This document shows, in pieces, positions 5,405 through 57,355 of a DNA stretch of 64,000 bases (positions within the stretch are counted from its first letter, which is position 1; every line of letters begins with the position of its first letter). The notes under the pieces were generated by a model. It saw only the letters and a list, made by a program, of their open reading frames with translations. It did no database searches and had not been told where the DNA came from. A program made the position numbers and the translations under genes. The stretch is from positions 248,001 to 312,000 of IMG/VR virus record IMGVR_UViG_3300028920_000001. One strand, 5' to 3'.

Positions 5405-5746
5405 ATGAATAATTTAGATATGGTTTGTAGTAAATGCAAAATAGCAGAATGTTGTCCTAAGAAGGGGTCCAGTCCATTAGTTATACCTGGCAAAAAACCA
5501 GAAATGTGCCAGTTAGTTAACGGGTATGGGCGAGATCCGATTTCAGATGATAAATTATCTGAAGAATCTAAACAACTTGTAGATAAACAAGGAAGATGTC
5601 TATCTATTGCTGAAATTCCTGTTTTAGATGAACATACTGGAAAAATCTATCGCGAAATAGTCAAGATCTTTCATCAGCCTATTCTTCATCCACGTGAAAA
5701 AACTAATTGGCAATTAGATATGATATACCCAAGAAGTCATCGATGA
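5405..5746 (+). CDS. Cys-rich hypothetical protein
   Basis: CSKCKIAECC; GTAAAGT-N6-ATG upstream. Confidence 0.6.
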   Translation: MNNLDMVCSKCKIAECCPKKGSSPLVIPGKKPEMCQLVNGYGRDPISDDKLSEESKQLVDKQGRCLSIAEIPVLDEHTGKIYREIVKIFHQPILHPREKTNWQLDMIYPRSHR

Positions 5747-7089
5747 TCACCAATAGTATCAGGTTTCACTGCTCGACACCATTGCATTAATGATGGCCAC
5801 CGGTCTTTTGCTAGTTCATACATTTGATATGCAATTTTACGATATGAAATATGTCCCTGTGGTTGAGTTCGCAATTCTACAATATAATATAATTCCTTAA
5901 GATCCACTTGAAATTGAGATCTATGGAGATAACCCAATGGTATTATATATTGTATTAAATCTGTATCATAAATAACATTTTCATCTATATATTGGGCAGC
6001 TTGAATCATGATTTCATTATATTCATTATTTAATTCAGGATTTTCTGCAATATCCACTGGAGTGCAATATCCATAATTAGTAGATAATGGTTCAATATAT
6101 TGTTCACATCTTCGGTGTCTTTGTAAATCTCTGAATGCGCCATAATCCATCATGATTTCATAAGTGATTTTAATAGTTTTGAATATATCAGGAACTTCAA
6201 ACATGGATGGTCTTTGATTCATGCAATTTTTAAATTCTTCCCAACTCATATAATGCCAAGATGCAACCAAAGATTCAAATGCAGTTTGTTCTAAATCAGG
6301 ATCAGGTAATAAATATGGTCGCGAAATTTTTACATATGGAGATGGATGATCTGCAATGAATTCATCCCCTAATGATCCGAGATTTTTGATTGGAAACTGG
6401 AATTCATTTGGTTCAACATGTTTCATGAGTACAGGGACTACATTTTGTACTGCGGTCAATAATTTTTGTCCAATATGTTGGAATTCTGGATTAGTGTGAC
6501 TTAATAATTCAACAGTTAAATTTCGAATATCCCTGAGGTTTGCGACAGCTGCTAAATTAGTACCGGTTCCAGCAGGTAAAATATATCGAACATTATCAAA
6601 AGCTCGAGCTTTAACTATAGGGTCTTTTAATGTTGCAGGATCATCAGGGTCTTTCTCCATCTTTATAGCACATTCTCTTAATACTTTAGGATATAATCTA
6701 TCATAGGCATCATAAAATCTAGATACAAATTGGAGCATAGATGCAGATGCACCTGGTGGAGTAATGAATGATTCTTTGGAAAATTTTTGATATCTAGTAC
6801 TCTTTTCTGAATATCCGGGTCTTTGGAGTTTTTCAAGAATTTTAGATGCAATAATTGATACCCCTTCAAAGCAAATGGGTAAATTAGCTAATTCTGCTAC
6901 TGAGGAATGATTGTATTTAATTACCCACTTTTCATGAAATTTATCTGCCTCTTCCTTTGATAATTTAGCTAAAATCTCACGAGCTGAAAGAGGCGATCTC
7001 GAATACTTTGCTAGTACAGTTGCTTGTACGGCTGGATCAAGTAATCTACCATCTTGATCGGCCAAACAAAAGATATCAGCTGGAATCAT
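5737..7089 (-). CDS. thyX: Flavin-dependent thymidylate synthase, tandem-domain type
   Basis: HSSVAE, EKSTRY, ARAFDNVRYILP, RDLQRHR, ELRT..QGH motifs; start moved to ATG 7089, which has a GGAG SD. Confidence 0.85.
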   Translation of the reverse strand: MIPADIFCLADQDGRLLDPAVQATVLAKYSRSPLSAREILAKLSKEEADKFHEKWVIKYNHSSVAELANLPICFEGVSIIASKILEKLQRPGYSEKSTRYQKFSKESFITPPGASASMLQFVSRFYDAYDRLYPKVLRECAIKMEKDPDDPATLKDPIVKARAFDNVRYILPAGTGTNLAAVANLRDIRNLTVELLSHTNPEFQHIGQKLLTAVQNVVPVLMKHVEPNEFQFPIKNLGSLGDEFIADHPSPYVKISRPYLLPDPDLEQTAFESLVASWHYMSWEEFKNCMNQRPSMFEVPDIFKTIKITYEIMMDYGAFRDLQRHRRCEQYIEPLSTNYGYCTPVDIAENPELNNEYNEIMIQAAQYIDENVIYDTDLIQYIIPLGYLHRSQFQVDLKELYYIVELRTQPQGHISYRKIAYQMYELAKDRWPSLMQWCRAVKPDTIGDHR

Positions 7090-7099
7090 CGGAGCTCCT

Positions 7100-7738
7100 G
7101 TGGATATGGATGCACAATCCAAACTAAACTTACAGCAAAAAGTTTCTCAAATACAGCATTACTGGTTTGAATCACTGCATAAGCAATCTGCTAGAGTAAG
7201 CCAAGTACGAAGATATGATAAGGGCAAATCTAAGTATATCTTATTTAAAAAACCAATTAAGAAGAATATGCCTGAGGATTTCAGGCCATGGCAGAGTATG
7301 TTATCTCCATCTGCTTTATATAATTGTTCACTTAAATGCCGAAAGGCAATGGGAATCTCTACTCCTGAAGTAAAATGGGTTAGTATTAAAAGATGGGTTA
7401 CTACTACCCCGAGTGGAATTGACTTACCTGAAGGAGTATATTATTCAATCAAACGACACGAAGAATTTGATGCTTCAACAGATCCACCTAAATTCATCAA
7501 AACTCAATATATCTTATTAATGTTTCCTTATGGGAATGTATGGAGTCAAATTGAAAAAAATATACCTATTACTGAGGATTGGATGTTTACTGAACATGAG
7601 AATACGTTAATGCTTGAACATTTAATGCGTAAAGATGCTGCATATCCATTGGACGGATATTTTGGTCGTGTATATGAATATTTAATTAATAATGAAGATC
7701 AAATTGGAATCCATTTAAAGCGAAAGAAAAACAAATAA
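7100..7738 (+). CDS. Hypothetical protein (start uncertain)
   Basis: 212-aa ORF divergent from thyX. Confidence 0.5.
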   Translation: MDMDAQSKLNLQQKVSQIQHYWFESLHKQSARVSQVRRYDKGKSKYILFKKPIKKNMPEDFRPWQSMLSPSALYNCSLKCRKAMGISTPEVKWVSIKRWVTTTPSGIDLPEGVYYSIKRHEEFDASTDPPKFIKTQYILLMFPYGNVWSQIEKNIPITEDWMFTEHENTLMLEHLMRKDAAYPLDGYFGRVYEYLINNEDQIGIHLKRKKNK

Positions 7739-7987
7739 TTATCTAATTTGAATCCATGAGATAGTTTTAAGAATTCTAATTTGTTCTTCTAATTTAAGTC
7801 TAATGTCTTTATCATGACTCTTAGGTAATTTAATTTTTGCCTGTGGGGCTCCATTAGATTCTATTTCAAATTCAATATTTTCAATAAACCCTATTTGTTC
7901 GGTACCAACATAGACGGTGCACCCTCGAGTGCTTATACACACTGTGAGTACACCGTCTCCGAAAACTTTAGGATTATCGAAACTCAC
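7739..7987 (-). CDS. Small hypothetical protein coupled to the purZ-like gene
   Basis: 4-bp ATGA overlap with the stop of 7984..9204. Confidence 0.6.
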   Translation of the reverse strand: MSFDNPKVFGDGVLTVCISTRGCTVYVGTEQIGFIENIEFEIESNGAPQAKIKLPKSHDKDIRLKLEEQIRILKTISWIQIR

Positions 7988-9204
7988 AGCAGGCTGATAA
8001 TATCCTCATGGTCAGCACCGGTTCCGATCAAAACAACCGGTACTTGGGCAATCTCCTCGACTTTATCGATAAATTGACGAGTTTCTGAAGAAAGCTTTTC
8101 TAAAGCCTCTTTTCCGCCACGAATTCCATGGTCTTGCCAATTGAGATACTGAACAAAATTAACTGAAATTTTAGTGACTCCGTTGGTGCGGACCGCATCT
8201 TGTAAGCCAATCCAGGAAAAAGTAGCAACACGACGAATGCGTTTAGTTACTGTCGTTCGTTCACGCTCAGCCAAAATTTTCTTTTCTTCTTCTGGCATTC
8301 CGGCTTGATCAGCTACCTGTTCCCAGGTGAGTTCTTTGCAATCAGGATAAAAATCTCCGGAGTATCCTTTTTGCTTTCCTTCTTCAATCACGTTCCCGAC
8401 TCGGATCGGCACAGTACGGAGATTCATATAGACATCTCCAATCATAGAAGGTGGTATAGCCATATGATCCATAGCTGCCTGTAAGGTGCAATTTCGAGAA
8501 GTGCAATATGGATAATGAGAACCATGATCAATGCTGAGGGCATATCCTTGGCTTCCCTCATGTAGCCAGGTATGCCCTTCGTTTATAATATTGTGAGTTA
8601 AATTACGAAATTCGAAAGCATCTACAACCTTGACTTGTTCACAAAATTCATTAGGCATCCCATCAAGCCACATACTGGTTTCTTCATCAGTATTGATCAA
8701 ATGACGGACAGCATCTAGAACAGGATCACCACCATCACTACTGCTCCTGGCTAGAATAACATCTGGCTTTCGCATGATGCGGTCAGTGATAGCTGCTGCA
8801 GTACCTTGCATAGTCGAAGCCACATGCTTGGTGGAATTGGCGCCAGATTCTTCCCTTTTCTTATGTTCATCTGTAACGATGCTAGTGCGATCATGAATGA
8901 AAATCTTTGGCCTATTTGCTTGATCCCATTCTTTGATCAATTGTTTCCAAAAGAAACCAGAACCGGGCGAGACGAAACACTTAATATCGACGCCCTTAAC
9001 CTTCTTCAAAATAGCGGCAGTAGGCAAAGCCTTGGCTACAAATTTAGTTCCATCTTGGAAAGCAGCTGTATGTCCAGCATTAGGATAGTTTGAAGAAGAA
9101 ACATTTACAATTCCAAACTTATCAGCTAACCAAGCTGAAATTTTTCCTTTTCCACTAGATCCCCATGCCTGATCGATAAGACAATTAAACTTTCCTGTTT
9201 CCAT
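7984..9204 (-). CDS. purZ: Adenylosuccinate synthetase homologue, PurZ type
   Basis: WGSSGKG (Ser where PurA has catalytic Asp), PNAGHT, STMQG, EGSQG, YPYCTSR, PIRVGN, ELTWEQ, TTVTKRIRRV, NFVQYL. Family is clear; PurZ versus PurA is inferred from residues. Confidence 0.75.
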   Translation of the reverse strand: METGKFNCLIDQAWGSSGKGKISAWLADKFGIVNVSSSNYPNAGHTAAFQDGTKFVAKALPTAAILKKVKGVDIKCFVSPGSGFFWKQLIKEWDQANRPKIFIHDRTSIVTDEHKKREESGANSTKHVASTMQGTAAAITDRIMRKPDVILARSSSDGGDPVLDAVRHLINTDEETSMWLDGMPNEFCEQVKVVDAFEFRNLTHNIINEGHTWLHEGSQGYALSIDHGSHYPYCTSRNCTLQAAMDHMAIPPSMIGDVYMNLRTVPIRVGNVIEEGKQKGYSGDFYPDCKELTWEQVADQAGMPEEEKKILAERERTTVTKRIRRVATFSWIGLQDAVRTNGVTKISVNFVQYLNWQDHGIRGGKEALEKLSSETRQFIDKVEEIAQVPVVLIGTGADHEDIISLL

Positions 9205-9250
9205 GGCGGCCCTTTCTTAATTTATTTTACACAAGAAAAAACTTTGTAGG

Positions 9251-10021
9251 TTATTTGGGCCTGAATGTCTCAGTTTCTACTGAAGAAATTCGAACTCGGT
9301 TTTGTTTTCTAAGAATATTCTTTAAGTCTCGAGCTTCAGCATACTTGGCAATTGAATATTCAGGTTGGTCGGGCTGTCCAAGAGCTACTAATCGAGCCCC
9401 GGCTAATTCTTTTGGAGTATATTTCCTACCTTCAAGTTGAAGTTCTTTACGTCGTTTGACTCGATTAGCCCATCGCATATCAAGCATTCGTCGTACTGCT
9501 TTTTCGCTCACAAATTGAATTCGAATAGTGAGATCAAAGGGAATCTTTCGATATAAGCGTAGACTCATACGGCATGCGTAATCGCATCCCAAGGCAAAAG
9601 CATGTTGATATGAATTAGCTCGGATTAAAACATGTGACAACTTGAATTTTGGTGGAAAAATAGCCCTCCAAATTTTAATTTCAGGCGAAACTTCAGCTCC
9701 TGGACCTAATAACTTTTCCAAAGTCTCGTTTCGATAACCCGGGAAAGCTAAGCTCATGGCTGCATCATAAAGCTGATCAAATCTAGTTTTATTGGCCTTA
9801 TGAGCTGGTATAGGAATTTCTTTTAAAAGATCGAGTGGAATAGTATTATTATGAATAAAATCAACAAACATTGCTCTGAAGTAATCTCGGTCCTTTGGGC
9901 TTGAGGCTCTTTGGATATACTCTTCCAGGCGTTCCTTTGGGCTTCTCTCGCGTTTCCCGGCTTTAAAGGTCTTTTGTCCCGTCTTGGACTTAGAGGCTTT
10001 TTTCATACCTTCTCGTGTCAC
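9251..10021 (-). CDS. Basic hypothetical protein
   Basis: 256-aa K/R-rich ORF. Confidence 0.65.
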   Translation of the reverse strand: MTREGMKKASKSKTGQKTFKAGKRERSPKERLEEYIQRASSPKDRDYFRAMFVDFIHNNTIPLDLLKEIPIPAHKANKTRFDQLYDAAMSLAFPGYRNETLEKLLGPGAEVSPEIKIWRAIFPPKFKLSHVLIRANSYQHAFALGCDYACRMSLRLYRKIPFDLTIRIQFVSEKAVRRMLDMRWANRVKRRKELQLEGRKYTPKELAGARLVALGQPDQPEYSIAKYAEARDLKNILRKQNRVRISSVETETFRPK

Positions 10022-10041
10022 GAACGGGTTATATTTAAATA

Positions 10042-10084
10042 ACAGCCGTGAGAGAACTTTTGTTCAGAAGATCTCTTCGGCTGT
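10042..10084. other. Imperfect stem-loop
   Basis: acagccg..agaga / tctct..cggctgt. Confidence 0.5.
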
Positions 10085-10386
10085 AGAGTTATTTCGCATT
10101 GGATGGAGCGTGGGTATAAATGACAATACGAGTCATCTCCCCAATAAGGTTTAGATTTAACAGGGGTTGGATCATAGATCCGACGAGTCTGAACCTTATC
10201 CGAAAGGCGCGGGCGTCGATCCTAAAGATCGTAAAGAATATGAAGATCTGGATTCAGAGCAACTCCTCTCTGAGCCTAGATTTATTCAGAGTAGCCGAGT
10301 TCGGTTTTACCGTTCGTCGTTGCCCCTCTGTTTAGAGATTTTCTTTTCTCTTCTATTCTTTCTTTCGATCCATTCCTAATGCTCTT

Positions 10387-10776
10387 TTGAAAAAACTCAA
10401 TACCATGTATTCAAATACAGATATAAATTCAACGAGCGAAGCGAGTAAGCAGGAAGCGGAAGCGAAGGAGCATTGGGTACTAGAGGGTGAACATAAGGCG
10501 AGTGAAGGATCAGGTTTAGTCCGGACATTTATGATATTTATAGGGCTTCCGATACATATTGAGTATCAAGTAGCTCCAATGCCGATTTTAAATCCGGGCC
10601 GAGTAATCGATCTTGACCTCTCTTTAAGGCATCCGAAGGATCCGAGAAAGGTTAGGAAGATTCAGGGCCCGCACATAGTCTCGAGTTCTAAGCTCAGATA
10701 TGAATCGGACGGAAGACCTTCAAGAAAGGGTCTTTCTCAATATCTGGAAATGAAAATCTTCGAGCTTGCCACGTAA
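10387..10776 (+). CDS. Hypothetical protein (true start probably downstream)
   Basis: C-terminal ~70 aa looks protein-like; the 5' part crosses a GAAGC-repeat tract. Confidence 0.4.
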   Translation: MKKLNTMYSNTDINSTSEASKQEAEAKEHWVLEGEHKASEGSGLVRTFMIFIGLPIHIEYQVAPMPILNPGRVIDLDLSLRHPKDPRKVRKIQGPHIVSSSKLRYESDGRPSRKGLSQYLEMKIFELAT

Positions 10777-10876
10777 GCTCGGGCATGTTATTATCCAGAT
10801 TGTCTGGTGCCGTAAATACTCGGCGCGGCTCTGTAACTCCGTTAAGTCGACGAACCGGTCGTCGCAGGGAGGAAAG

Positions 10877-12265: not shown

Positions 12266-12280
12266 ATTTTTATTCTATGA

Positions 12281-13711: not shown

Positions 13712-14045
13712 TAAATTCACTGGCGAGCGTCCTAACAGACGACTTCGGCTAGTTTCATATGAGTATGCTTGTACTAAGATTCCTCGTTTGGTTTTATTAT
13801 TATTGAGGCAAGAGCAACTAAGAATCACTACCGGGAGTCATCGGGAAGGTTATGATGTAGTTACTATTTATCGGCTTACTCATCCGGAAGATTATTGGGT
13901 ATTGCTTCGGGAAGATTTTGAAAGAGTCAAAAATATAGCGTCAAATTCTACTCTTAGAATATTTGGATCCGAAACTGATCAAGATATTAAGAATCGTATT
14001 TTAGCGCTTGTAAAAGTAGAGTTTTCAGATAGGAAGGTTTTCTAG
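13686..14045 (+). CDS. Hypothetical protein
   Basis: 119-aa ORF in the operon. Confidence 0.55.
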   Translation: MTMDGSLYNKFTGERPNRRLRLVSYEYACTKIPRLVLLLLRQEQLRITTGSHREGYDVVTIYRLTHPEDYWVLLREDFERVKNIASNSTLRIFGSETDQDIKNRILALVKVEFSDRKVF

Positions 14046-14052
14046 GTATTAT

Positions 14053-14253
14053 ATGACTAAGAAGAAGGATCCGGGACCAATCGTTTTAGTTCCGTGTAAG
14101 CGTGGAAGAGATCAAAAGACTGCCGGGACCAGTTGTTCTAGTAAAAAAGCATATAAATTAAGTGAAGACGGGGCTAAGCTTGTGAGGTTTAAGTGCGTTG
14201 AATGTGGACACACTTGGACTATTCCGGTTGGTGGCCAATTCACTGCTGTTTGA
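14053..14253 (+). CDS. Zinc-ribbon protein
   Basis: C..C..FKCVECGHTW. Confidence 0.65.
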   Translation: MTKKKDPGPIVLVPCKRGRDQKTAGTSCSSKKAYKLSEDGAKLVRFKCVECGHTWTIPVGGQFTAV

Positions 14254-14454: not shown

Positions 14455-15255
14455 ATGAATTGTGGAGTTGTAGGAAACATTAATGCAGTTCGTACTTTCC
14501 AAAATTTCTTTAGTAGAGAATTTAGAGTCCTAGTTTTAAATGGTCCTTCTTATATTGGGAAGTGGACTTTTGCTAGAAATTGGTTGATTGAACAAGTACA
14601 GGCTGCTGATTTTTTTGAGCCAGATACTTCAATTTCCGGAGCTCGTGAAGTAAAGGCGTTTTTTGAAACTGAACCGTTATTTAGTTCATGGAAAGTAGCC
14701 TTAATTAATGACGCTGATCGACTAAGTGAACCGGCGCAAGATGTTTATCTCAAGATTTTGGAAGAACCGCCATCTAAAGCTCGAATTGTCTTCATTACTG
14801 AAGATTGTGATGCTCTTTTGTCTGCGTTGAAATCTAGACTTCAGCATATTATCCGATGGCATATGCTTTATGGTGGTGAGATGGATGAATTCATTGAGTC
14901 TAGTGAATTCACTGAAGATAAAGAGGCTCGACGTCTTTGTGCAGGTCGTCCTGGTTTGTATAATTTCTTAGCTGGAAAATGTGAACCTTATTCTCAGCTT
15001 TACACAGCTGTAGAACAATCTATTGGTGGTGAATCCTCTTTATTTATGCCTATTCCTGAGATTATTTTGAATCTGAAAAATAAGCGTTCGATTGAGAAAG
15101 ATGCAGCAGCTCAAATAATAAGATCAGCAGCTAAACAAAAATTATCTAAGAATAATCGGAAAGTGTCGAAATTTTATGAATTTGCAGCTATTTTACTTAG
15201 ACAACCATCAGCTAGTGCAGAAATTCATTGGCAAAAAGCTATCTTAGATCTTTGA
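14455..15255 (+). CDS. holB: Clamp-loader delta-prime-like subunit
   Basis: GPSYIGK, INDADRLSEPAQDVYLKILEEPP, ALKSRL. Confidence 0.85.
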   Translation: MNCGVVGNINAVRTFQNFFSREFRVLVLNGPSYIGKWTFARNWLIEQVQAADFFEPDTSISGAREVKAFFETEPLFSSWKVALINDADRLSEPAQDVYLKILEEPPSKARIVFITEDCDALLSALKSRLQHIIRWHMLYGGEMDEFIESSEFTEDKEARRLCAGRPGLYNFLAGKCEPYSQLYTAVEQSIGGESSLFMPIPEIILNLKNKRSIEKDAAAQIIRSAAKQKLSKNNRKVSKFYEFAAILLRQPSASAEIHWQKAILDL

Positions 15256-15270
15256 ATGTAATTTTTTGTC

Positions 15271-16197
15271 TTGGCTAATTTAGTTATCATAAACGGGGAT
15301 GATGAATTCCTCAAAGAACGTGCTGCTTTAGATGAAGCGCATAATTTTTTAACGAATGATATAGACTGGTTTGATTATTCCAATCTTGATCGTTATCTAG
15401 ATGAATCTCAAATGGTTCCGTTGTCGGGGGAAGGTCGAATATTTATCATCCGAAATTCGAAAAAAGTACCAGAACTCCCATGTGGTGAAAATGATGTACT
15501 CATTCTAATATCGCATTCTCAGCTTACCGATGGTAGAGCTAAACGAATACATAGTATAAAGGCGCTGAAAACTTTCGATAATAACAATGAAATCATTAAA
15601 TGGATTTTAGTTGAGGGTAGACGATCTAATATCGATTTATCTAGAGTCGCTGGTGCTTTATATATCAATAATGGAAAACGCTTAAGGAAAATTCATTCTG
15701 AAATCCAAAAATTAATAGCATTAACTGAACCCGGTGATATTGTTTCTCCTGAAGTTGCTAGATCAGTGTTATGTTTTTCTGCTGATCTCACACCTAAACA
15801 AGTAGTGGATGCAATGATTGATGGTAATGCTAGATTAGCACTAGGTTATTACGATAAGCTACAAGAAAAAGCGGATGAGACTGGATGGATCATATCATAT
15901 ATGCAATTTCATGTGCTTCAACAACTAAGAATGGAAGAATTACATCGGAAAGGAGTGGAACATAACGATTCGGCAGCTAAACTTAGTGTTCACCCGTTTG
16001 TATACAAAAAGATGTTAGAAAAACGTTTGGGACTGTGGACTTCAGAGTCTTTATTAAACAGTGTTTCTGCGCTCTGTGATCTCGATCTCGAACATAAGCG
16101 TGGCAACAAAGCAGCTCGATTAGGGTTGGAAGCAGAAATTATTAGACTGTCTGAGGAGTCAGGGAATGTCCAAAGAGTCAGTGGCACGAAAAACTGA
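15271..16197 (+). CDS. holA: Clamp-loader delta-like subunit
   Basis: IINGDDEFL, IHSEIQKL, LSVHPFVYKK, LCDLDLEHKRG..RLGLE. Confidence 0.8.
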   Translation: MANLVIINGDDEFLKERAALDEAHNFLTNDIDWFDYSNLDRYLDESQMVPLSGEGRIFIIRNSKKVPELPCGENDVLILISHSQLTDGRAKRIHSIKALKTFDNNNEIIKWILVEGRRSNIDLSRVAGALYINNGKRLRKIHSEIQKLIALTEPGDIVSPEVARSVLCFSADLTPKQVVDAMIDGNARLALGYYDKLQEKADETGWIISYMQFHVLQQLRMEELHRKGVEHNDSAAKLSVHPFVYKKMLEKRLGLWTSESLLNSVSALCDLDLEHKRGNKAARLGLEAEIIRLSEESGNVQRVSGTKN

Positions 16198-18955
16198 TAT
16201 CGAATCTCCTGGTGTCGCGACCTTAGAAAAAGTAGTGGGGATGCCGAAAGCCGGCAAAGAAGCTGGTACTTGGGAGCGTGTTTTTACTGTAGAAGGTGTA
16301 CATCCATTTGATGAAATAGAATGGAAGACAATAAATGCTAAAATCGTAGCTGAAAATGGTGAAATTAAATACGAGCAAAAAGATGTTGAATTTCCAATTT
16401 GGTGGCATCAGACCAATATTAATGTAGTAGCTAGTAAATATTTTCGTATTATTGATGGAGTTAAAGAAAATTCACTTAAACAAATTATAACTCGAGTAGC
16501 TAACGTTATTACGGATTGGGCTACTGAGCAAGAATACTTTAACACAGAGAATGACGCTAATATTTACAAGCAAGAATTAATTTATGCTTTGGTTCATCAA
16601 TATGGAGCTTTCAATTCTCCAGTATGGTTTAACTTAGGAGTACCTGGTCGTCGTCAAACAGCTAGTGCTTGTTTTATTCAAGGAATTTATGACTCATTAG
16701 ACTCAATACAGACTTTTCAACGTTCTGAACTTAGTATTTTTGCTAGTGGTTCTGGATCAGGTGCTAATTTTAGTGATCTTCGTTCTTCATATGAGAAGCT
16801 TTCATCTGGTGCATATGTGTCTGGTCCAATTGCATGGATGCGTCCTTTAGATCAGGCAGCTGGTGCTATGAAGTCAGGAGGATCCACCCGAAATGCGGCT
16901 AAAATGGTCGTTATGGATATGGATCATCCTGATATCATGGAAACGTTAGACGGTCGTCCAGGTTTCATTCGATGCAAGGCCGTTGAAGAGCAGCGAGCTC
17001 ATGACCTAATTGAGATGGGATATGGAACAGCTTATGATGATCCAAATTCTGCGTACAAGAATGTGATGTATCAGAATGCGAATCATTCGGTGAGTGTGCC
17101 TGATAATTTTATGAAGTCTGTTGAGTCCGATGGACAATGGGAGACTAAAGAACGATTAACTAATGAAACGGTTCATACTTATAAAGCTCGTGATTTATGG
17201 GATGAAATTGCTAAAGCAGCTTGGAAATGTGGAGACCCTGGAGTTCAATTTACTGATACTATCAATAACTGGCATACTACGCCGAAATCTGGGAAAATTC
17301 GTTCGAGTAATCCATGTAGTGAATTCTTACATGTTGACAATACGGCATGTAATTTATGTGGTCTAAATCTTAGCAAGTTTTTTCTTAATGGAGCTCCACT
17401 CGATGTTAAAGCTTTTGAACATGCAGTTCGTATTTTCGTGACTGCACAAAATGCTTTTGTGAATAAGGCTGAATATCCTACACCTGAGATTACTAAGAAC
17501 TCCCATATGCTGAGGCCAATTGGTCTTAATTATGGTGATTTGGGCGCCGTTATCATGAAGCTTGGGTACGCCTATGATTCAGATGAAGGACGTGCAGTAG
17601 CAGCACGTTTAGCTAGTTTGATGACAGGCTATGCTTATCTGTATTCATCTAAATTGGCCGCCCGTACTCAGGTATTTCCTGAGTATGAACGTAATAAGCA
17701 AGATATGTTGCGAGTCATGCGCATGCATCAGAAAGCTGATGCTGACATTTTGAATCGTTGGAACTTATCAGAAGATCCATTATCTGTTAGTGATAAATCA
17801 CAATCAGTTTGGGAACGAGTTAATGCTATTGGCGAGCGTCACGGATTCGCTAATTCTCAGACTACACTTCAAGCTCCGCTTGGCACGATTTCATTTCTCA
17901 TGGGAATGGATACTACCGGTATTGAACCAGCATTTTCGTTGGTATCATATAAATCACTTGTCGGTGGTGGCTTTGAAAAATTAGTTAATCACGCGGTAGA
18001 ACAAGCACTGCTGATGCTTGAGTATTCTGATGATCAAATCACGGAAATTAGGGATTATATTAATCAAAATGATTATATAGAAAAAGCTCCACATCTAAAA
18101 GAAGATCATTTATCAGTATTTGATTGTGCAGCTAACACAGGTCCATCAAAACGTCACATTTCAGCGATGGGTCATCTTAAGATGATGGCTGCCATTCAGC
18201 CACTCATTACCTGTGCTATGAGTAAGACAGTTAATTTACCAGAAGAAACAACTCCGGAGCAAATTGCTGAAACGTATATGGATAGTTGGAAGCTCGGTCT
18301 CAAGTGTGTGGCTCTTTATCGCAATGGGTCAAAGAAATCACAACCTTTGTCGAGTAAAAAAAATAATTTCAAAGAAGAAAGACCTTCAGGAATTCAAGAA
18401 GTAATTAAAGAGATTATTAAAGAGGTCCCTGCACCACGTCGAAAGCTGCCGGAGAATATCTCTGCTAAGCGGCATAAGTTTGTGATTGATGGTTCTAAGG
18501 GTTATTTAATTATGGGTGAATATGAGGATGGAACCTTAGGTGAAATCTTCATCCGATTCGGTAAGAACGGTTCTACGTTAAATGGTCTTATGGATGCGAA
18601 TACGCAATTAGCTAGTATTGCATTACAGCATGGTGTTCCACTTGAGAAGTTGATTCGTGCATTTATTAATACTAAGTTTGAGCCGGCTGGGTTTACTCAG
18701 AATCCCGACATCAGGTTTGCTACAAGTTTACTTGATTATGTTTTCAAATATCTTGATATCAGATACTGTGGTGGTCGAGTTTCAGGTTTAGATGCTCGTC
18801 TCTCCGATCAAGATCATGATATTTCTCATCCGAGTTCTGATCGTCCTAGTATGACGCCAGATGCTCCACCTTGTGTTCATTGCGGTTCTATTACTCGCCG
18901 GAATGGTTCTTGCTATTTATGTGAGACTTGTGGTAACACTTCGGGTTGTAGTTGA
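16166..18955 (+). CDS. nrdJ: Class II (B12-dependent) ribonucleotide reductase with C-terminal TSCPD/Zn domain
   Basis: FNSPVWFN, SACFI, TRNAAKM, SNPCSE, APLGTIS, SKTVNLP, CETCGNTSGCS. Confidence 0.95.
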   Translation: MSKESVARKTDIESPGVATLEKVVGMPKAGKEAGTWERVFTVEGVHPFDEIEWKTINAKIVAENGEIKYEQKDVEFPIWWHQTNINVVASKYFRIIDGVKENSLKQIITRVANVITDWATEQEYFNTENDANIYKQELIYALVHQYGAFNSPVWFNLGVPGRRQTASACFIQGIYDSLDSIQTFQRSELSIFASGSGSGANFSDLRSSYEKLSSGAYVSGPIAWMRPLDQAAGAMKSGGSTRNAAKMVVMDMDHPDIMETLDGRPGFIRCKAVEEQRAHDLIEMGYGTAYDDPNSAYKNVMYQNANHSVSVPDNFMKSVESDGQWETKERLTNETVHTYKARDLWDEIAKAAWKCGDPGVQFTDTINNWHTTPKSGKIRSSNPCSEFLHVDNTACNLCGLNLSKFFLNGAPLDVKAFEHAVRIFVTAQNAFVNKAEYPTPEITKNSHMLRPIGLNYGDLGAVIMKLGYAYDSDEGRAVAARLASLMTGYAYLYSSKLAARTQVFPEYERNKQDMLRVMRMHQKADADILNRWNLSEDPLSVSDKSQSVWERVNAIGERHGFANSQTTLQAPLGTISFLMGMDTTGIEPAFSLVSYKSLVGGGFEKLVNHAVEQALLMLEYSDDQITEIRDYINQNDYIEKAPHLKEDHLSVFDCAANTGPSKRHISAMGHLKMMAAIQPLITCAMSKTVNLPEETTPEQIAETYMDSWKLGLKCVALYRNGSKKSQPLSSKKNNFKEERPSGIQEVIKEIIKEVPAPRRKLPENISAKRHKFVIDGSKGYLIMGEYEDGTLGEIFIRFGKNGSTLNGLMDANTQLASIALQHGVPLEKLIRAFINTKFEPAGFTQNPDIRFATSLLDYVFKYLDIRYCGGRVSGLDARLSDQDHDISHPSSDRPSMTPDAPPCVHCGSITRRNGSCYLCETCGNTSGCS

Positions 18956-21154: not shown

Positions 21155-21187
21155 ATCTAAAGATACATTGGTCAATAGGCCTTTGGT

Positions 21188-21814: not shown

Positions 21815-21833
21815 TACATTGTAAATTCAATGT

Positions 21834-31277: not shown

Positions 31278-32738
31278 GTGTCAGCTAAGCTTGACCTGAA
31301 ATATCGTCCTCAAAAGTTCGCTGAAGTTTTAGGTAATGAAGGAGTTAAGCAACTTCTTCTAGTTCGAAGTAAAAAAGGCGAATTTACTAACCAATCAATG
31401 ATGTTTAGTGGCCCAAAAGGCTGTGGGAAAACATCATTAGCCAGATTAGTAGCTCGTTCGATTGTATGCACTGCGCGGGTGGAAGGCGAACCGTGTAATG
31501 AATGCATGGCTTGTAAGTCTGTACTGGAAGAGACTTCAACTAGTGTGGAGGAGCTTGATGCTGCATCTCAAGGAACAGTAGACAAAATTCGATCTATGGT
31601 AAGAGATATTGAATACGAGCCTTTGGATGGAGCTGAAACTAGTATTTATATAGTAGACGAAGCTCAGCGATTATCTAAAGCTGCACAGGACGCTTTTCTT
31701 AGAGCCATTGAGAATCGACAATTTATAGTCATATTTTGTACCACTGAACCGCATAAAATTCAAGGTCCGATTAGAGACAGACTCGAGGAGTACCCGATTC
31801 GTCCTCCAACTGAAGACGAATTAGTTCACCGAATGACTGAGATTTGTCAAAAGGAACAAATTCAAGCTTCAGATGAGGTTTTACACTTAATAGCTCAAAT
31901 TCATGGTAATACTCCGCGTTCGAGTTTTTTAGCTATTGACTCTCTTTCAGATCTTGGTGAAATTACTGTCGAAAATGCCAAAAAGCTGTTCAGATTTGAC
32001 AGTTACAAATTAACGGATTTAGTGCTTACTTTAGTAGATTCCGATCCAGTTAAAGCATTTGAGTATCTCGATATGTTATCTAATCTTGAAAGTTCTACTT
32101 GGATTCGTGACGCTATCGTATTGGCAGTTTCTAGTGCATTTCGTGAGAGTATTGGAGCTAAATCTACGTATTTAGTCCCTACTCATTTTTTCTCTATTCG
32201 ACAACGAAATTGGATTAAATTAGCTCAGAAGATTGGTGGGATAGATCGACCTTCCATAGCTGACATCGAAGCAGCGTTATTGGTGGATAGTCAGGCTGTT
32301 CCTGAATCTGAGTTTAATACTGAACTTTTTTCAAATCCTAAAATGTCGTCGGCCAAATCTGTTGACGGTCAGGCGTTGGAAGTCGAAATGACAACAGTGT
32401 CTGAGTCTGCTGATCATCCTTTACGAAATTCTCTTTCTGAACTTCAAGAAGCACGTACTGAAAACTTGTCAAATTATATGAACAAGCCTGTTCTGAATTT
32501 GCCTCCGATAGAATCAACATCAACCGAACCGAAGTCTAAGGAAGCTAAACCTGTAAAATCGATAGAAGTGGAGGGAGTTAGATTTTCATCTACTGAGAGT
32601 TTAACTTCTTTGGATGATAAAATAGAAAAGTCGGAATTGAAGAAAGATATTAAACGTGATTTACTTGAGGTAGAGTTAGATAAATCACGTGTCCCAGTTA
32701 CCTCCAAAGAGTTCTCCAAACTCCTCAAAGATATTTAA
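31278..32738 (+). CDS. dnaX: DNA polymerase III gamma/tau subunit
   Basis: KYRPQKFAEVLG, GPKGCGKTSLAR, PCNECMAC, ELDAAS, IVDEAQRLS, CTTEPHKI. Confidence 0.93.
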   Translation: MSAKLDLKYRPQKFAEVLGNEGVKQLLLVRSKKGEFTNQSMMFSGPKGCGKTSLARLVARSIVCTARVEGEPCNECMACKSVLEETSTSVEELDAASQGTVDKIRSMVRDIEYEPLDGAETSIYIVDEAQRLSKAAQDAFLRAIENRQFIVIFCTTEPHKIQGPIRDRLEEYPIRPPTEDELVHRMTEICQKEQIQASDEVLHLIAQIHGNTPRSSFLAIDSLSDLGEITVENAKKLFRFDSYKLTDLVLTLVDSDPVKAFEYLDMLSNLESSTWIRDAIVLAVSSAFRESIGAKSTYLVPTHFFSIRQRNWIKLAQKIGGIDRPSIADIEAALLVDSQAVPESEFNTELFSNPKMSSAKSVDGQALEVEMTTVSESADHPLRNSLSELQEARTENLSNYMNKPVLNLPPIESTSTEPKSKEAKPVKSIEVEGVRFSSTESLTSLDDKIEKSELKKDIKRDLLEVELDKSRVPVTSKEFSKLLKDI

Positions 32739-34245: not shown

Positions 34246-34366
34246 TAAAGTATTTATGGTTGCTTATGCAACCTCGGTCGATATCATACCTAATATAAAA
34301 CAGACCTCGATATTATAATGATACCTACACAACCACGACACATATTGTGTCCGACCGAGGTTGCCA
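34246..34366 (+). promoter_or_regulatory. Structured 5' leader with SD-occluding stem
   Basis: -10 TAAAGT at 34246; perfect 13-bp inverted repeat 34268-34280 / 34352-34364 covers the GAGG SD. Confidence 0.6.
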
Positions 34367-35180: not shown

Positions 35181-36827
35181 GTGGATATCTTACAAAATTT
35201 GTTGGATCGAGGTATTGAGTCTAGTAATCTTAATACTGAAAAGACTTTAAAACATTTAGTCAAATTCGGACTAAACTCTAAGTCCGAAGTATATGCTGTT
35301 TGTAAATGTGGTAACGAAAGATTAATTAAATTAGCTTCTATTTTGAGAGTTATTAAACGAACTGGTTCATATCAATGTAATTCATGTGCTGTCAAAAATA
35401 AATGGGATGACCCATCTTATGCTCAGAGGCATAAGGACGGTGTTTCCAATTCATGGACAAAATCTAAAAGACAGAAACAATCTGTTATTTCCAGAGATTT
35501 ATGGTCCGATAGTAAATTTCGGGAGAAACAGCGGACTCTATCTATTGAATTATGGGACGATAAAGATAAAAGAGAAGAAGCTTCGAAATTTGCTAAGAAT
35601 TTATGGAGGAATTTAGAATATAGAAAACGTCATGAAGAAGTATGGGCTGATTCTAAATATAAAGCTGATAATTCTGAAAGAATAAAGAAAGTCTGGCAAA
35701 GGTCTGATTACAAAGAAAAATTTGAAAAACTGTGGGCTGATTCAGATTTCAAAAAGAAATTGTCTAAATGTGCTAAGCTTCTTTGGGAAAGTGAGGAGTA
35801 TAGACAGAAAGTAGTTATTGCACAGCGTAGACTTTGGGAGAATCAAAAATATAGAGAAAGGATGGCTAATATTAGAGCATCTCATTCTGGGAAAGATTCG
35901 ATTCTAGAACGAGTTACTCAGCAATTACTTAATCTTTTGAATGTGGAATATAATAAACATTATGTGATTGGTCCTTATGAATTTGATCTATTTGTTCAGT
36001 CTTATGATTTGCTGATTGAGTGTCAAGGAGAGTATTGGCATTCTCTAGATAAAGCAAAGAAAAATGATGCTGTAAAATCTACATATATAGATGAATATTT
36101 TCCTCAATTACAATTACTTTATCTATATGAAAGGGATTTTCTTAATCCTGAGATTGTTAAACAAAAGTTAGCTAAGGCTATTTATGGAGAAAATACTGAG
36201 GTTACTGAAATTGATTTCTTATTTTCCGATATTCAGATTCAAAAATTAGATATGAAGAAAAAGTTAAAGGATTCTTTTTATTCAGAGCCTGAAGAATTTC
36301 TTCAATCATTTCATTATGCGGGCTTTGGAAGATCAGCTAAAGTAATTTACGGGGCTTATTTAGGTGATAAGTTAACTGCGATTTGCAAGTTTGCAGGAGT
36401 GGTAAGAAAAGAAGTAGCTACGTCTATGAAATTAAAGCCATCAGAGGTCTTAGAATTAGATAGGTTTTGCATTCATCCCGAATATCAAAAGAAGAATTTC
36501 GCCTCTTGGTTTATTTCTCGTTGTTCTAAATTAGTATTTGAGGAATTTTCGAAGTTAAAGTATTTAGTTTCTTTTGCTGATACTACCTACGAACATTTTG
36601 GAACGATTTATAAAGCTGCTAATTGGCAAGAATTCCATAGAACTAGACCTAGTTATCATTATATGTCTGATGATGGTTTCATCATGCATAAGAAGACATT
36701 ATATGGACATGCTCGTTCAATGAAAAAGACTGAAAGAGAATACGCCAAAGAATTTGGATATACCAGGATCTATGGGAAGGAAAAAATTAAATTTATTTAT
36801 CCTAAGCTAATTTCAGCTTCTTGTTAA
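35181..36827 (+). CDS. Vsr/DUF559-like endonuclease fused to a Mom-like GNAT domain
   Basis: Trp-periodic helical repeats; YEFDLF..LIECQGEYWH; LELDRFC, LVSFADT, GTIYKAANW. Confidence 0.75.
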   Translation: MDILQNLLDRGIESSNLNTEKTLKHLVKFGLNSKSEVYAVCKCGNERLIKLASILRVIKRTGSYQCNSCAVKNKWDDPSYAQRHKDGVSNSWTKSKRQKQSVISRDLWSDSKFREKQRTLSIELWDDKDKREEASKFAKNLWRNLEYRKRHEEVWADSKYKADNSERIKKVWQRSDYKEKFEKLWADSDFKKKLSKCAKLLWESEEYRQKVVIAQRRLWENQKYRERMANIRASHSGKDSILERVTQQLLNLLNVEYNKHYVIGPYEFDLFVQSYDLLIECQGEYWHSLDKAKKNDAVKSTYIDEYFPQLQLLYLYERDFLNPEIVKQKLAKAIYGENTEVTEIDFLFSDIQIQKLDMKKKLKDSFYSEPEEFLQSFHYAGFGRSAKVIYGAYLGDKLTAICKFAGVVRKEVATSMKLKPSEVLELDRFCIHPEYQKKNFASWFISRCSKLVFEEFSKLKYLVSFADTTYEHFGTIYKAANWQEFHRTRPSYHYMSDDGFIMHKKTLYGHARSMKKTEREYAKEFGYTRIYGKEKIKFIYPKLISASC

Positions 36828-54224: not shown

Positions 54225-54266
54225 GGCATTGATAAGCGGATATCCTAATAGGAGGCATTTGTAACA

Positions 54267-55535: not shown

Positions 55536-55748
55536 TGACTACGGTTCTACCTAACGGGGAACCACCACAAATACCAGAGCAAATATATAAACTGGGTTCA
55601 GTAACCGGAGGTTTTGGGTCAGATTTGATTTGATGATATTGGAAGGAGAGACGATTTCGCGGTTCGCCGGACTTGAAATTATCTCCTGAAGAGATTCGAA
55701 GAATACAGATTTGATTCTAAACTCAACGAAACTGGAGAATTATTAATC

Positions 55749-56423: not shown

Positions 56424-56456
56424 GGGCGCTAGAAGGAATGAAAGGGCAAATTAGTC

Positions 56457-57350: not shown

Positions 57351-57355
57351 CGCAC

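What the first reader, a model, noticed from the sequence alone, without database searches (positions are those of the whole stretch)
7739..9204. PurZ-type enzyme in a large phage with a Pol III-type replisome: possible Z-DNA jumbo phage
Seen: GSSGKG in place of PurA GDEGKG, PIRVG in place of TRVG, and NFVQY in place of the GTP-specifying K-x-D. Known: these substitutions characterise PurZ, which makes the 2-aminoadenine (Z) precursor from dGMP. Characterised Z phages are small-genome phages, typically with DatZ/MazZ and often a family A polymerase. Here the neighbours are thyX and nrdJ plus clamp-loader genes, in AT-rich DNA that appears to use TANNNT promoters. No datZ or mazZ is recognisable in the window. 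An unknown 82-aa ORF is coupled to purZ. Inference: full or partial A-to-Z substitution by a different route, or a new substrate.
Basis: partly seen in the sequence, partly recalled or inferred. Interest (0 to 1): 0.82.

Follow-up and report, generated by a model that had tools for sequence, protein, structure and literature searches.

The report
PurZ gene in a 429-kb phage
A gene in a ~429-kb marine-sediment phage belongs by sequence, fold and phylogeny to the PurZ family, the enzyme that starts synthesis of the DNA base 2-aminoadenine (Z), and it sits on a large unstudied branch carried mostly by very large phages; whether this phage's DNA contains Z is still untested.

Summary
ORF 7984-9204 (-) encodes a 406-aa adenylosuccinate-synthetase homologue. 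It carries every residue that separates PurZ from PurA: Ser for the catalytic Asp, the TTVTK loop Thr, and N-F-x-Q-Y in place of the guanine-specifying TKLD.

Its best sequence and structure matches are the solved PurZ enzymes of phiVC8 and S-2L. A rooted tree places it inside PurZ (100/97), apart from PurZ0 and from bacterial and archaeal PurA.

The window is part of a 428,825-bp phage contig. Relatives at 55-80% identity sit in the same thyX / nrdJ / clamp-loader neighbourhood on contigs of 180-445 kb.

No DatZ, MazZ, DUF550/DUF5664 or dUTPase-like gene was found in the 85 kb (20%) of the genome I could read. Canonical DatZ was found only on contigs of 66 kb or less.

The query is nevertheless bracketed in the tree by purZ genes that sit next to DatZ+MazZ, DUF5664, dUTPase-like or MazZ-like genes. 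One of these is in a 436-kb sister phage.

Best reading: a working PurZ that makes the dZ precursor, so Z-DNA probably reaches huge phages. How dATP is excluded, and how much A is replaced, are unknown. The 82-aa ORF is real, but its linkage to purZ is not conserved.

The parts
7984..9204 (-). purZ-type gene (406 aa), predicted N6-succino-2-amino-2'-deoxyadenylate synthase
   Evidence: PF00709 at E 3.6e-34. Best PDB sequence hits are phiVC8 PurZ 6fko (4.5e-37) and S-2L PurZ 7odx (1e-31). Best NCBIfam model is NF038379 PurZ; PHROG 1211. PurZ-state residues are S16, T317, N349, F350, Q352, Y353. AF2 pLDDT is 97 and the Foldseek top hits are PurZ structures. It lies inside the PurZ clade at 100/97.
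7739..7987 (-). 82-aa ORF of unknown function; its GTG start overlaps the purZ stop (GTGA)
   Evidence: Homologues at 32-38% identity occur in 13 related huge-phage loci, always beside the 212-aa gene but not always beside purZ. No Pfam, NCBIfam, PHROG or Atlas lead. No similarity to the small ORFs that follow purZ in phiVC8 or BCSR129.
7106..7738 (+). 210/212-aa conserved gene of unknown function, convergent with the 82-aa ORF at zero spacing
   Evidence: About 50% identity in relatives at E 1e-67 to 1e-70. Found in the 16 closest loci only. No family or Atlas lead.
9251..10021 (-). 251/256-aa conserved gene directly upstream of purZ on the same strand (47-nt gap), function unknown
   Evidence: 55-57% identity in relatives, in the 16 closest loci. 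AF2 pLDDT is 74, with no Foldseek match in PDB or AFDB clusters. Atlas gave nothing.
5737..7122 (-). thyX, a long form (450-461 aa) of flavin-dependent thymidylate synthase
   Evidence: PF02511 at 1.5e-34 in two stretches; TIGR02170. It keeps this position in the 437-445 kb relatives.
14455..16197 (+). clamp-loader delta' -like (14455-15255) and delta-like (15271-16197) genes
   Evidence: PF13177 at 9.4e-16 and PF21694 at 1.5e-12.
16166..18955 (+). nrdJ, class II B12-dependent ribonucleotide reductase
   Evidence: PF02867 at 3e-120, plus PF08471 and TSCPD.
31278..32738 (+). clamp-loader ATPase (tau/gamma-like)
   Evidence: PF13177 at 9e-22 plus AAA.
35181..36827 (+). REase-like N-terminal part fused to a Mom-family acyltransferase domain (aa 372-523); a second, adenine-directed DNA-modification gene
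   Evidence: PF25680 Mom at 1.9e-20, weak REase_MTES_1575. PDB 8bv8 Mom at E 0.02. The architecture is described for jumbo phages in PMC7824862.

Best explanation
Window 7984-9204 (-) encodes a functional PurZ. SHOWN by sequence, predicted structure and phylogeny: it belongs to the PurZ family, on a deep and previously uncharacterised branch carried mainly by large and huge phages. [quoted passage not shown] INFERRED from the known pathway: host adenylosuccinate lyase converts dSMP to dZMP, and kinases then make dZTP (host Gmk/Ndk, or possibly the phage dNMP-kinase-like gene just upstream of the window). The phage replisome then incorporates Z opposite T, so at least part of the adenine in this 429-kb genome is replaced by 2-aminoadenine. 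NOT RESOLVED: how dATP is kept out. No DatZ, MazZ, DUF550/5664 or DutZ was found in the 20% of the genome I could read. The extent of replacement is therefore unknown.
For: (1) Residues. Every experimentally or structurally assigned PurZ determinant is in the PurZ state and invariant in the clade. S16 corresponds to phiVC8 S14 / S-2L S23 and replaces PurA Asp13. T317 corresponds to T262/T273. N349-F350-x-Q352-Y353 corresponds to S-2L N305/F306/Q308 and phiVC8 F295/N297/Y298 (adenine stacking and 6-NH2 bonding) and replaces TKLD. P266, Y286 and W294 are also in the PurZ state. The roles come from PMC8342488 and bioRxiv 10.1101/2025.10.22.683976.
(2) Scores. PurZ models and structures rank first in PDB sequence search, NCBIfam (195.5 bits for PurZ, 169 for archaeal PurA, 130 for TIGR00184), PHROG 1211 and Foldseek on a pLDDT-97 model.
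(3) Phylogeny (IQ-TREE LG+C20, UFBoot/SH-aLRT). E. coli plus Nitrososphaera PurA form the outgroup. PurZ0 is supported at 100/99. All PurZ including the query form one clade at 100/97.
(4) Bracketing. The smallest well-supported set that holds the query (17 rows, 98/95) also holds three kinds of purZ locus. The first is followed directly by a dUTPase-domain gene (L045, L071, Chondromyces L107). The second carries a PF18909 dATP/dGTP diphosphohydrolase domain (L037/L039). The third is the 436-kb sister phage L029, which has a MazZ-like NTP pyrophosphatase 4.7 kb from purZ. Its homologues lie on contigs whose lengths equal those of two further purZ contigs. The next brackets hold loci with DatZ+MazZ (L067, L042, L060).
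(5) Constraint. The gene keeps its place in conserved synteny across 180-445 kb phages. In 12 of 150 representative clusters it carries inteins in the NAGH|T and YPx|CTSR catalytic loops, as is typical of indispensable nucleotide-metabolism and replication genes.
(6) Context. thyX, nrdJ and a dNMP-kinase-like gene surround it.
Against: No biochemical or nucleoside data exist for any member of this branch. The protein is only 33-35% identical to characterised PurZ. It misses the curated NCBIfam PurZ cut-off (195.5 against 300 bits). Foldseek rates Pyrococcus PurA almost as high as PurZ. No dATP-removing enzyme was found in 85 kb around the gene. A DatZ profile search found hits only on contigs of 66 kb or less. 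About 35 large-contig loci show no partner within 10 kb of purZ; L029 is the only exception. A REase-Mom fusion in the window implies that N6 of adenine is a modification target. Palindrome statistics give no signal either way. Partner genes were sought by homology only, and 80% of the genome was not read.
Confidence: 0.65

Rival explanations
1. It is a PurZ-fold enzyme whose product is not used for wholesale A-to-Z replacement. Options: Z goes in only partially or locally; dZ nucleotides are a precursor for a further modification; the enzyme mainly reshapes the dGMP/dGTP pool; or specificity has shifted (for example GMP or dIMP, or a different donor) on this deep branch.
For: No dATP-clearing enzyme was found in the 85 kb read, and none lies within 10 kb of purZ in about 35 large-contig relatives. 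Canonical DatZ appears only on contigs of 66 kb or less. The REase-Mom fusion suggests adenine is still present in the DNA. The branch is long, at 33-35% identity to assayed enzymes. It has clade-specific insertions (query residues ~155-212, 270-280, 297-315) and differs at phiVC8 I34 (S36 here) and G256 (A298 here).
Against: All residues known to set dGMP and ATP specificity are conserved. Several members of the same clade sit in complete Z-clusters. In E. coli, PurZ, MazZ and DatZ alone already give substantial Z incorporation with non-selective polymerases (PMC8342488).
Confidence: 0.2
2. It is an ordinary auxiliary purine-synthesis gene: a PurA that turns IMP into adenylosuccinate to raise AMP/dATP supply for an AT-rich (about 62% A+T) genome, placed beside thyX and nrdJ for that reason.
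For: Public annotation of all relatives reads 'adenylosuccinate synthase'. The genome is AT-rich. The gene neighbours dTMP and dNDP supply genes. Huge phages are reported to carry purine-synthesis genes (PMC7162821).
Against: The catalytic Asp13 is Ser; Asp is 99% conserved in true PurA (PMC12884076). The TKLD guanine-specificity motif is replaced by NFVQY. PurA HMMs score far below their cut-offs (130 against 395.55 bits). The tree separates it from bacterial and archaeal PurA at 100/99.
Confidence: 0.08
3. It is an inactive or decaying remnant with no present function.
For: None beyond the lack of recognised partner genes nearby.
Against: The reading frame is intact and has a ribosome-binding site. 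There are 84 invariant columns among 16 relatives. Synteny is conserved. The AF2 model has pLDDT 97. Inteins persist in the active-site loops of relatives.
Confidence: 0.02

Closest known systems
PurZ of Vibrio phage phiVC8 (PDB 6FKO/6FM1/6TNH) and cyanophage S-2L (7ODX)
   Same: Same short archaeal-type fold (Foldseek E about 1e-29, TM by target 0.84-0.85). Same Ser-for-Asp P-loop, the same TTVTK(R/K)xRR loop, and the same N-F-x-(N/Q)-Y adenine pocket. Same clade in the tree.
   Different: Only 33-35% identical. It is 40-60 residues longer because of three insertions. It lies in a different major subclade, supported at 96/90. It is carried by a 429-kb phage with Pol III-type clamp-loader genes, not by a 39-45 kb phage with PolA or PrimPol. 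datZ and mazZ are not adjacent, whereas both phiVC8 and S-2L have them within 1 kb.
PurZ0 (Arthrobacter phage Wayne, Gordonia phage Ghobes; PDB 7VF6)
   Same: Ser at the Asp13 position and a TTVT loop. The partner enzymes known from PurZ0 phages (dUTPase-like DutZ, DUF5664) reappear beside purZ in the query's near relatives.
   Different: PurZ0 has a GSEAKG P-loop and keeps an Asp in the donor-base motif (TMLDQ / SFADQ). The query has GSSGKG and NFVQY. PurZ0 forms a separate clade at 100/99.
Archaeal short PurA (Pyrococcus horikoshii 2D7U/5K7X; Nitrososphaera L108)
   Same: Compact architecture; structural match TM 0.90 by target, rmsd 2.5 Å.
   Different: Archaeal PurA keeps GDEGKG, YPYVTSS, TRVG and TKLD. 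It groups with E. coli PurA outside the PurZ clade.
Flavobacterium phage MaF61 ORF141 (168-kb isolated myophage, PQ858689)
   Same: PurZ-state motifs (GSSGKG, TTLTKLPRR, NFVNY). It is sister to the query's subclade (93/82). It is a large phage, and its genome has a MazG-domain gene, ORF62.
   Different: 34% identity and a long branch. It has a T4-like genome with class I RNR and its own DNA polymerase. Its paper makes no mention of Z.

Membership tests
PurZ (succino-amino-deoxyadenylate synthase) | Ser replaces the catalytic Asp13 of PurA in the P-loop (phiVC8 S14, S-2L S23) | tested here: met
   The query has S16 in GSSGKG. It is invariant in 12/12 clade members and in 122/125 representative clusters.
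PurZ (succino-amino-deoxyadenylate synthase) | [quoted passage not shown] | tested here: met
   The query has T317 in TTVTKRIRR; 12/12 clade members keep it. E. coli PurA has Gly here.
PurZ (succino-amino-deoxyadenylate synthase) | Adenine-specific donor pocket N-F-x-(N/Q)-Y in place of the (N/T)KxD guanine motif | tested here: met
   The query has N349, F350, Q352 and Y353 (NFVQY), against E. coli TKLDV and PurZ0 TMLDQ.
PurZ (succino-amino-deoxyadenylate synthase) | Falls inside the PurZ clade, separate from PurZ0 and PurA, in a rooted tree | tested here: met
   The PurZ clade of 65 rows including the query has 100/97 support. The outgroup is E. coli plus archaeal PurA (quick trees agree).
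PurZ (succino-amino-deoxyadenylate synthase) | Nearest solved structures are PurZ | tested here: met
   Foldseek ranks 7odx, 6tnh and 6fm1 first. P. horikoshii PurA follows closely.
PurZ (succino-amino-deoxyadenylate synthase) | Reaches the curated score of the NCBIfam PurZ model NF038379 (300 bits) | tested here: not met
   It scores 195.5 bits. This is the best of all models but below the cut-off. That model is of the narrow 'exception' type and covers 293 positions. I take the miss as a sign of a divergent branch, not of another family.
PurZ (succino-amino-deoxyadenylate synthase) | Activity: dGMP + Asp + ATP -> dSMP, with no use of IMP/GTP | not testable with these tools
   Needs an enzyme assay.
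Z-genome cluster (PurZ + dATP/dGTP-pool enzymes + Z in DNA) | A dATP-removing enzyme (DatZ HD hydrolase, DUF550/DUF5664 or DutZ) in the same genome | tested here: inconclusive
   None was found in record positions 226,508-311,985 (20% of the genome) by Pfam, phmmer or jackhmmer. No DatZ homologue lies on any contig above 66 kb. Relatives within the query's clade do have such enzymes.
Z-genome cluster (PurZ + dATP/dGTP-pool enzymes + Z in DNA) | MazZ-type (d)GTP pyrophosphatase that supplies dGMP | tested here: inconclusive
   Not found in the 85 kb read. It is present 4.7 kb from purZ in the 436-kb sister phage L029. No homologue was recorded on the 428,825-bp contig (that search is limited by its word filter).
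Z-genome cluster (PurZ + dATP/dGTP-pool enzymes + Z in DNA) | Z-selective family A polymerase DpoZ | tested here: inconclusive
   There is no PolA domain in the window, only Pol III-type clamp-loader genes. S-2L shows that DpoZ is not obligatory (PMC8065100 abstract).
Z-genome cluster (PurZ + dATP/dGTP-pool enzymes + Z in DNA) | 2-aminoadenine present in virion DNA | not testable with these tools
   The only runs that hold the sequence are kept as assembled contigs. Base identity cannot be read from them.
PurA (canonical adenylosuccinate synthetase) | Catalytic Asp13 and the (N/T)KxD guanine-specificity motif | tested here: not met
   The query has Ser16 and NFVQY.
PurA (canonical adenylosuccinate synthetase) | Reaches the TIGR00184 or NF003295 equivalog cut-offs | tested here: not met
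   130 against 395.55 bits, and 169 against 368 bits.
PurZ0 | GSEAKG-type P-loop, an Asp kept in the donor motif, and membership of the PurZ0 clade | tested here: not met
   The query has GSSGKG and NFVQY. PurZ0 is a separate clade at 100/99.

The most novel reading that the evidence does not exclude
A whole radiation of large and huge phages carries 2-aminoadenine in its DNA. IMG/VR alone holds 17 contigs above 200 kb and 26 above 150 kb among the 80 best loci. In the two lineages whose neighbourhoods I read (this one and its 437-445 kb relatives), purZ sits among Pol III-type clamp-loader genes. In lineages such as this one, dATP would be excluded by an enzyme of a kind not yet known, or replacement would be deliberately partial. 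Z could also be combined with Mom-type N6-acylation to give a doubly modified purine.
Probability: 0.3. Interest if true: 0.8.

Novelty: new variant of a known kind. Interest (0 to 1): 0.62.

Why it matters
Z-DNA is the only natural case in which a canonical base is replaced by one that changes Watson-Crick hydrogen bonding. So far it is documented only in small phages (about 36-82 kb) of a few host phyla. The 2021 and 2026 jumbo-phage reviews I checked list dU, deazaguanine and momylation, but not Z.

This finding shows that the PurZ family is much larger than its characterised part. There are 582 confirmed relatives in IMG/VR and 237 clusters below 1e-30 among the 50%-identity representatives. 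A major branch lives in phages of 150-445 kb.

If these genomes contain Z, three things follow. First, Z synthesis would be compatible with very large phage genomes; in this lineage the replication genes seen are Pol III-type clamp-loader genes. Second, there would be further solutions to the dATP-exclusion problem, which are of interest for making Z-DNA enzymatically. Third, metagenomic surveys that annotate these genes as 'adenylosuccinate synthase' auxiliary metabolic genes would be misreading a DNA-modification system.

Two cultured handles came up that make the question testable at the bench: Flavobacterium phage MaF61, and an integrase-bearing element in Chondromyces apiculatus DSM 436.

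Tried and rejected
- Megablast of 8 kb around the gene against GenBank phages: no match.
- tblastn against the same collection: only small Z phages, at 34% identity or less.
- tRNA and Rfam scans of the window: nothing.
- Sigma-70 promoter and terminator scans around the operon: not above shuffled background.
- 82-aa ORF against the small ORFs downstream of purZ in phiVC8 and BCSR129: no similarity.
- Pfam, NCBIfam, PHROG and ESM-Atlas searches of the three conserved neighbours (82, 212 and 256 aa): nothing.
- AF2 of the 256-aa protein (pLDDT 74) followed by Foldseek on PDB and AFDB clusters: no match.
- Walking the contig with the look-up of encoding contigs: it added about 21 kb upstream, containing only small unknown genes plus DNMK-like, DHH/DHHA1, DSPc-like and NADAR. 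The downstream attempt returned only a short contig. I abandoned this as too slow to cover 429 kb.
- Look-ups of representative proteins P0125 and P0126: only 2-4 kb contigs.
- Palindrome and restriction-site avoidance in the window: all 4-mers have O/E 0.85-1.24, and there is no contrast between A/T-containing and GC-only sites that the counts can support. Inconclusive.
- Sequencing runs: only Logan contigs of a marine-sediment metagenome hold the sequence. There are no raw or long reads, so I did not use read laying for base-modification signals.
A narrower alignment worked.
- The PurA-type auxiliary-gene reading and the pseudogene reading were considered and rejected on residues, HMM scores, phylogeny and conservation.
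Full report
**What is at the coordinates**

The ORF listing gives a 406-aa ORF at 7984..9204 on the - strand. It has an ATG start and a GAAAGG element 7 nt upstream. An 82-aa ORF follows at 7739..7987 on the same strand. Its GTG start overlaps the TGA stop as GTGA.

The 406-aa protein matches Pfam Adenylsucc_synt (PF00709) at E 3.6e-34. Against all PDB sequences, the best hits are the PurZ of Vibrio phage phiVC8 (6fko and related entries, 4.5e-37) and of cyanophage S-2L (7odx, 1e-31). Pyrococcus horikoshii PurA follows at 2.9e-25, PurZ0 (7vf6) at 3.8e-15, and bacterial or eukaryotic PurA at 1e-11 to 1e-18.

| Query | E. coli PurA | phiVC8 PurZ | S-2L PurZ |
|---|---|---|---|
| GSSGKG | GDEGKG | GSTGKG | GSTGKG |
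| PIRVG | STRVG | PIRVG | PIRVA |
| NFVQY | TKLDV | NFCNY | NFAQY |

**Is it PurZ, PurZ0 or PurA?**

I took the defining residues from the literature.
- S-2L S23 / phiVC8 S14 replaces the PurA catalytic Asp13.
- T273/T262 contacts the substrate.
- N305, F306 and Q308 (phiVC8 F295, N297, Y298) bind the adenine of ATP or dATP and clash with a guanine 2-amino group (PMC8342488).
- A metagenomic association study picked the same positions independently and adds P233, Y244 and W252. It reports that changing S14 to D abolishes selectivity (bioRxiv 10.1101/2025.10.22.683976).

Mapped through an alignment of 147 sequences, the query has S16, T317, N349, F350, Q352, Y353, P266, Y286 and W294. All of these are identical in 12 of 12 close relatives. 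It departs from phiVC8 at I34 (S36 here) and G256 (A298 here), positions whose role is unknown.

NCBIfam ranks the PurZ model NF038379 first at 195.5 bits. Archaeal PurA NF003295 scores 169 bits and TIGR00184 scores 130 bits. None reaches its curated cut-off. PHROG 1211, '2-aminooxy adenylosuccinate synthetase', hits at 7.6e-58.

An AlphaFold2 model built on 68 homologues has mean pLDDT 97.2. Foldseek ranks S-2L and phiVC8 PurZ first (E 7e-30 to 5e-29). P. horikoshii PurA follows closely (2e-28), then PurZ0 (7e-25).

I built a careful maximum-likelihood tree of 70 sequences (LG+C20+F+G4, ultrafast bootstrap / SH-aLRT). It is rooted on E. coli PurA plus an archaeal PurA from a Nitrososphaera genome that has GDEGKG and TKLD. 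The tree gives PurZ0 as one clade at 100/99. All other PurZ, including the query, form a second clade at 100/97. Two quicker trees agree.

The gene is therefore a PurZ and not a PurZ0 or a PurA. It sits on a deep branch distinct from the one that holds phiVC8, S-2L, Acinetobacter and Burkholderia phage PurZ. Identity to those characterised enzymes is only 33-35%.

**Where the gene lives**

The protein is recorded on a 428,825-bp contig of a marine-sediment metagenome. The window is positions 247,986-311,985 of that contig. IMG/VR holds the same genome as a 426,960-bp viral contig.

The window contains these genes:
- nucleotide supply: thyX, nrdJ;
- replication and repair: three clamp-loader genes, NAD-ligase pieces, a RecD2-type helicase, an Mre11-like nuclease, a Cas4-like nuclease, a primase, a flap endonuclease;
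- transcription: a sigma factor, a NusG-like protein;
- DNA modification: a REase-Mom fusion;
- a block of unannotated, probably structural, genes.

The family is very large. More than 3,500 proteins passed E 1e-5 in the word-indexed search. Among the 50%-identity representatives, 237 clusters score below 1e-30. IMG/VR holds 582 confirmed loci. Of the 80 best IMG/VR loci, 17 are on contigs above 200 kb and 26 on contigs above 150 kb.

In the 437-445 kb relatives the order is conserved: nrdJ, clamp loader, several genes, the 256-aa gene, purZ, (82-aa gene), the 212-aa gene on the other strand, then thyX.

In 12 of the 150 representative clusters, purZ is interrupted by one or two LAGLIDADG inteins. 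These are inserted exactly at NAGH|T and at YPx|CTSR, the two catalytic loops. This fits a gene these phages cannot lose.

**The rest of the Z pathway**

In the window, and in about 21 kb upstream reached by walking the contig, I found no HD/YfbR, MazG, DUF550, DUF5664, dUTPase or NDT gene. I used Pfam, phmmer and jackhmmer seeded with S-2L, phiVC8, BCSR129 and Acinetobacter proteins. This covers 85 kb, or 20% of the genome.

A DatZ profile search of the 5.8-billion-protein collection gave 164 hits. All 120 listed hits are on contigs of 66 kb or less. Canonical DatZ therefore seems absent from huge phages.

The same jackhmmer searches on the 80 IMG/VR loci show a clear pattern.
- Classical small-phage purZ loci nearly always have mazZ and datZ immediately downstream.
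- Large-contig loci almost never show a partner within 10 kb.
- The exceptions fall inside the query's own part of the tree.
  - L042, L053 and L060 have YfbR-type HD and/or MazG genes.
  - L067, a 118-kb contig, has MazZ and DatZ directly after purZ.
  - L037 and L039 carry a PF18909 dATP/dGTP diphosphohydrolase domain.
  - L045, L071 and a Chondromyces apiculatus DSM 436 contig have a 255-aa dUTPase-domain gene overlapping the purZ stop.
  - The 436-kb sister phage L029 has a 203-aa MazZ-like pyrophosphatase 4.7 kb from purZ. Reciprocal jackhmmer gives 1e-17 and the EXXE / EXXD helices are visible.

Homologues of that last protein lie on contigs of 73,776 and 22,756 bp. These are exactly the lengths of contigs that carry two other purZ proteins of this clade. 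None is recorded on the 428,825-bp contig.

In the careful tree, the smallest well-supported set that holds the query (17 rows, 98/95) includes the dUTPase-linked, DUF5664-linked and MazZ-like-linked genes. This bracketing is the strongest indirect argument that the branch still makes Z precursors. It matches the 'functional convergence' of pool-editing enzymes described for known Z phages (PMC12884076).

**The neighbours**

The 82-aa, 212-aa and 256-aa genes are conserved only in the 16 closest huge-phage loci. The 82-aa gene always lies tail-to-tail with the 212-aa gene. In L025 and L040 the pair is about 5 kb from purZ. The overlap with purZ seen here is therefore not a conserved functional coupling. 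None of the three has any family, Atlas or fold match.

Just upstream of the window lie a dNMP-kinase-like gene (PF21448, 6e-7) and a DHH/DHHA1 phosphoesterase. A phage dNMP kinase could phosphorylate dZMP, but that is speculation.

**Points against a fully Z-substituted genome**

- No dATP-clearing enzyme has been found so far.
- The 548-aa protein at 35181-36827 joins a weak REase-like region to a Mom domain (1.9e-20). Iyer et al. describe this architecture for jumbo phages as adenine N6-acylation paired with a restriction module (PMC7824862). It implies that adenine, or at least a purine N6, is a modification target in this genome.
- Palindrome statistics are uninformative.

**Comparison with what is known, and novelty**

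The papers I could search describe Z genomes in seven groups of small phages infecting Pseudomonadota, Cyanobacteriota and Actinomycetota (PMC12884076). No paper in the library links PurZ or 2-aminoadenine with jumbo, huge or mega-phages. The 2021 comparative study and the 2026 review of jumbo phages do not mention it. The huge-phage paper mentions purine-synthesis genes only in general terms. Public annotation of all relatives reads 'adenylosuccinate synthase'.

The enzyme family and the chemistry are known. What is new is the branch, its size, its home in 150-445 kb genomes (with Pol III-type clamp-loader genes beside it in this lineage), and the missing or unconventional dATP-exclusion partners. 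I therefore rate it a new variant of a known kind.

**Verdict**

- About 0.65: the gene is a working PurZ that feeds Z into this phage's DNA to some extent.
- About 0.2: it is a PurZ-fold enzyme with a different or more limited role.
- Under 0.1: it is an ordinary PurA.

The decisive tests are a full-genome profile scan, an enzyme assay, and nucleoside LC-MS on a cultured member of the branch (MaF61, or the Chondromyces element).

Noticed in passing
relatives P0121, P0123, P0124, P0130, P0131, P0138, P0142, P0146, P0147, P0149, P0235, P0250 (homologous to window 7984-9204): In 12 of 150 representative clusters, purZ carries one or two LAGLIDADG inteins. They are inserted at exactly two sites, NAGH|T and YPx|CTSR, which are the catalytic loops. 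P0124 has both.
   Followed up: partly
L107 (Chondromyces apiculatus DSM 436 contig18, NZ_ASRX01000018.1) 6387-13774: A cultured myxobacterium carries a phage integrase, a PurZ-state gene (41% identical to the query; GSSGKG, NFAQY), an overlapping 255-aa dUTPase-domain gene and an AAA_25 helicase-like gene. This looks like an integrated element with a purZ-dutZ-like pair. An IMG/VR contig (L045) is nearly identical.
   Followed up: partly
L012:7983-9326 and L020:36416-37003 (Flavobacterium phage MaF61, PQ858689, 167,814 bp): An isolated 168-kb myophage encodes a PurZ-state protein, annotated 'putative adenosuccinate synthetase', and a MazG-domain ORF62. Its paper does not discuss base modification. 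It is a cultured candidate for a large Z phage.
   Followed up: partly
window 35181-36827 (+): A 548-aa protein has a weak REase-like region and a C-terminal Mom-family acyltransferase domain. This is the REase-Mom fusion described for jumbo phages, so the genome probably has a second, adenine-directed modification.
   Followed up: partly
window 19249-22628: The NAD-dependent DNA ligase is in two pieces on opposite strands: adenylation plus OB domains at 20027-21214 (-), and HhH plus BRCT at 21834-22628 (+). A free-standing LAGLIDADG endonuclease (19249-20049) lies beside them, and a 208-aa ORF lies between them.
   Followed up: no
window 51465-54224 (+): A 919-aa ORF contains a Hint/intein with a LAGLIDADG domain (about aa 185-565). 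The host protein was not identified; it lies at the start of the presumed structural block.
   Followed up: no
window 54001-58000: G+C rises to 0.51 against about 0.34-0.44 elsewhere. The region covers ORFs 54267-55535, 55749-56423 and 56457-57350; the last has a weak Phage_capsid hit.
   Followed up: no
L016:19296-21127 (record positions ~246,060-247,890, just upstream of window position 1): A dNMP-kinase-like gene (PF21448, 6e-7; 303 aa) overlaps a DHH/DHHA1 phosphoesterase (315 aa). They may serve nucleotide salvage and phosphorylation for the modified pool.
   Followed up: partly
window 5737-7122 (-): ThyX is about twice the usual length (450-461 aa) and matches the Thy1 domain in two stretches. 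It is conserved at 57-59% identity in relatives.
   Followed up: no
window 7736-7741: The 82-aa ORF (-) and the 212-aa ORF (+) end tail-to-tail with zero intergenic bases. The pair stays together in 13 related loci even when it is displaced about 5 kb from purZ.
   Followed up: partly
window 14053-14253, 32689-33243, 34361-35146: The phage has its own transcription factors: a 66-aa TFIIS-type zinc ribbon, a NusG-like protein and a sigma-70 region-4 protein. The 499-aa protein at 10766-12265 has relatives with a faint Sigma70_r4 hit.
   Followed up: no
window 5700-10100: Two hot-spring metagenome runs hold about 10% of the sampled 31-mers of this region, so near-identical segments occur in a very different habitat from the marine-sediment source.
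   Followed up: no
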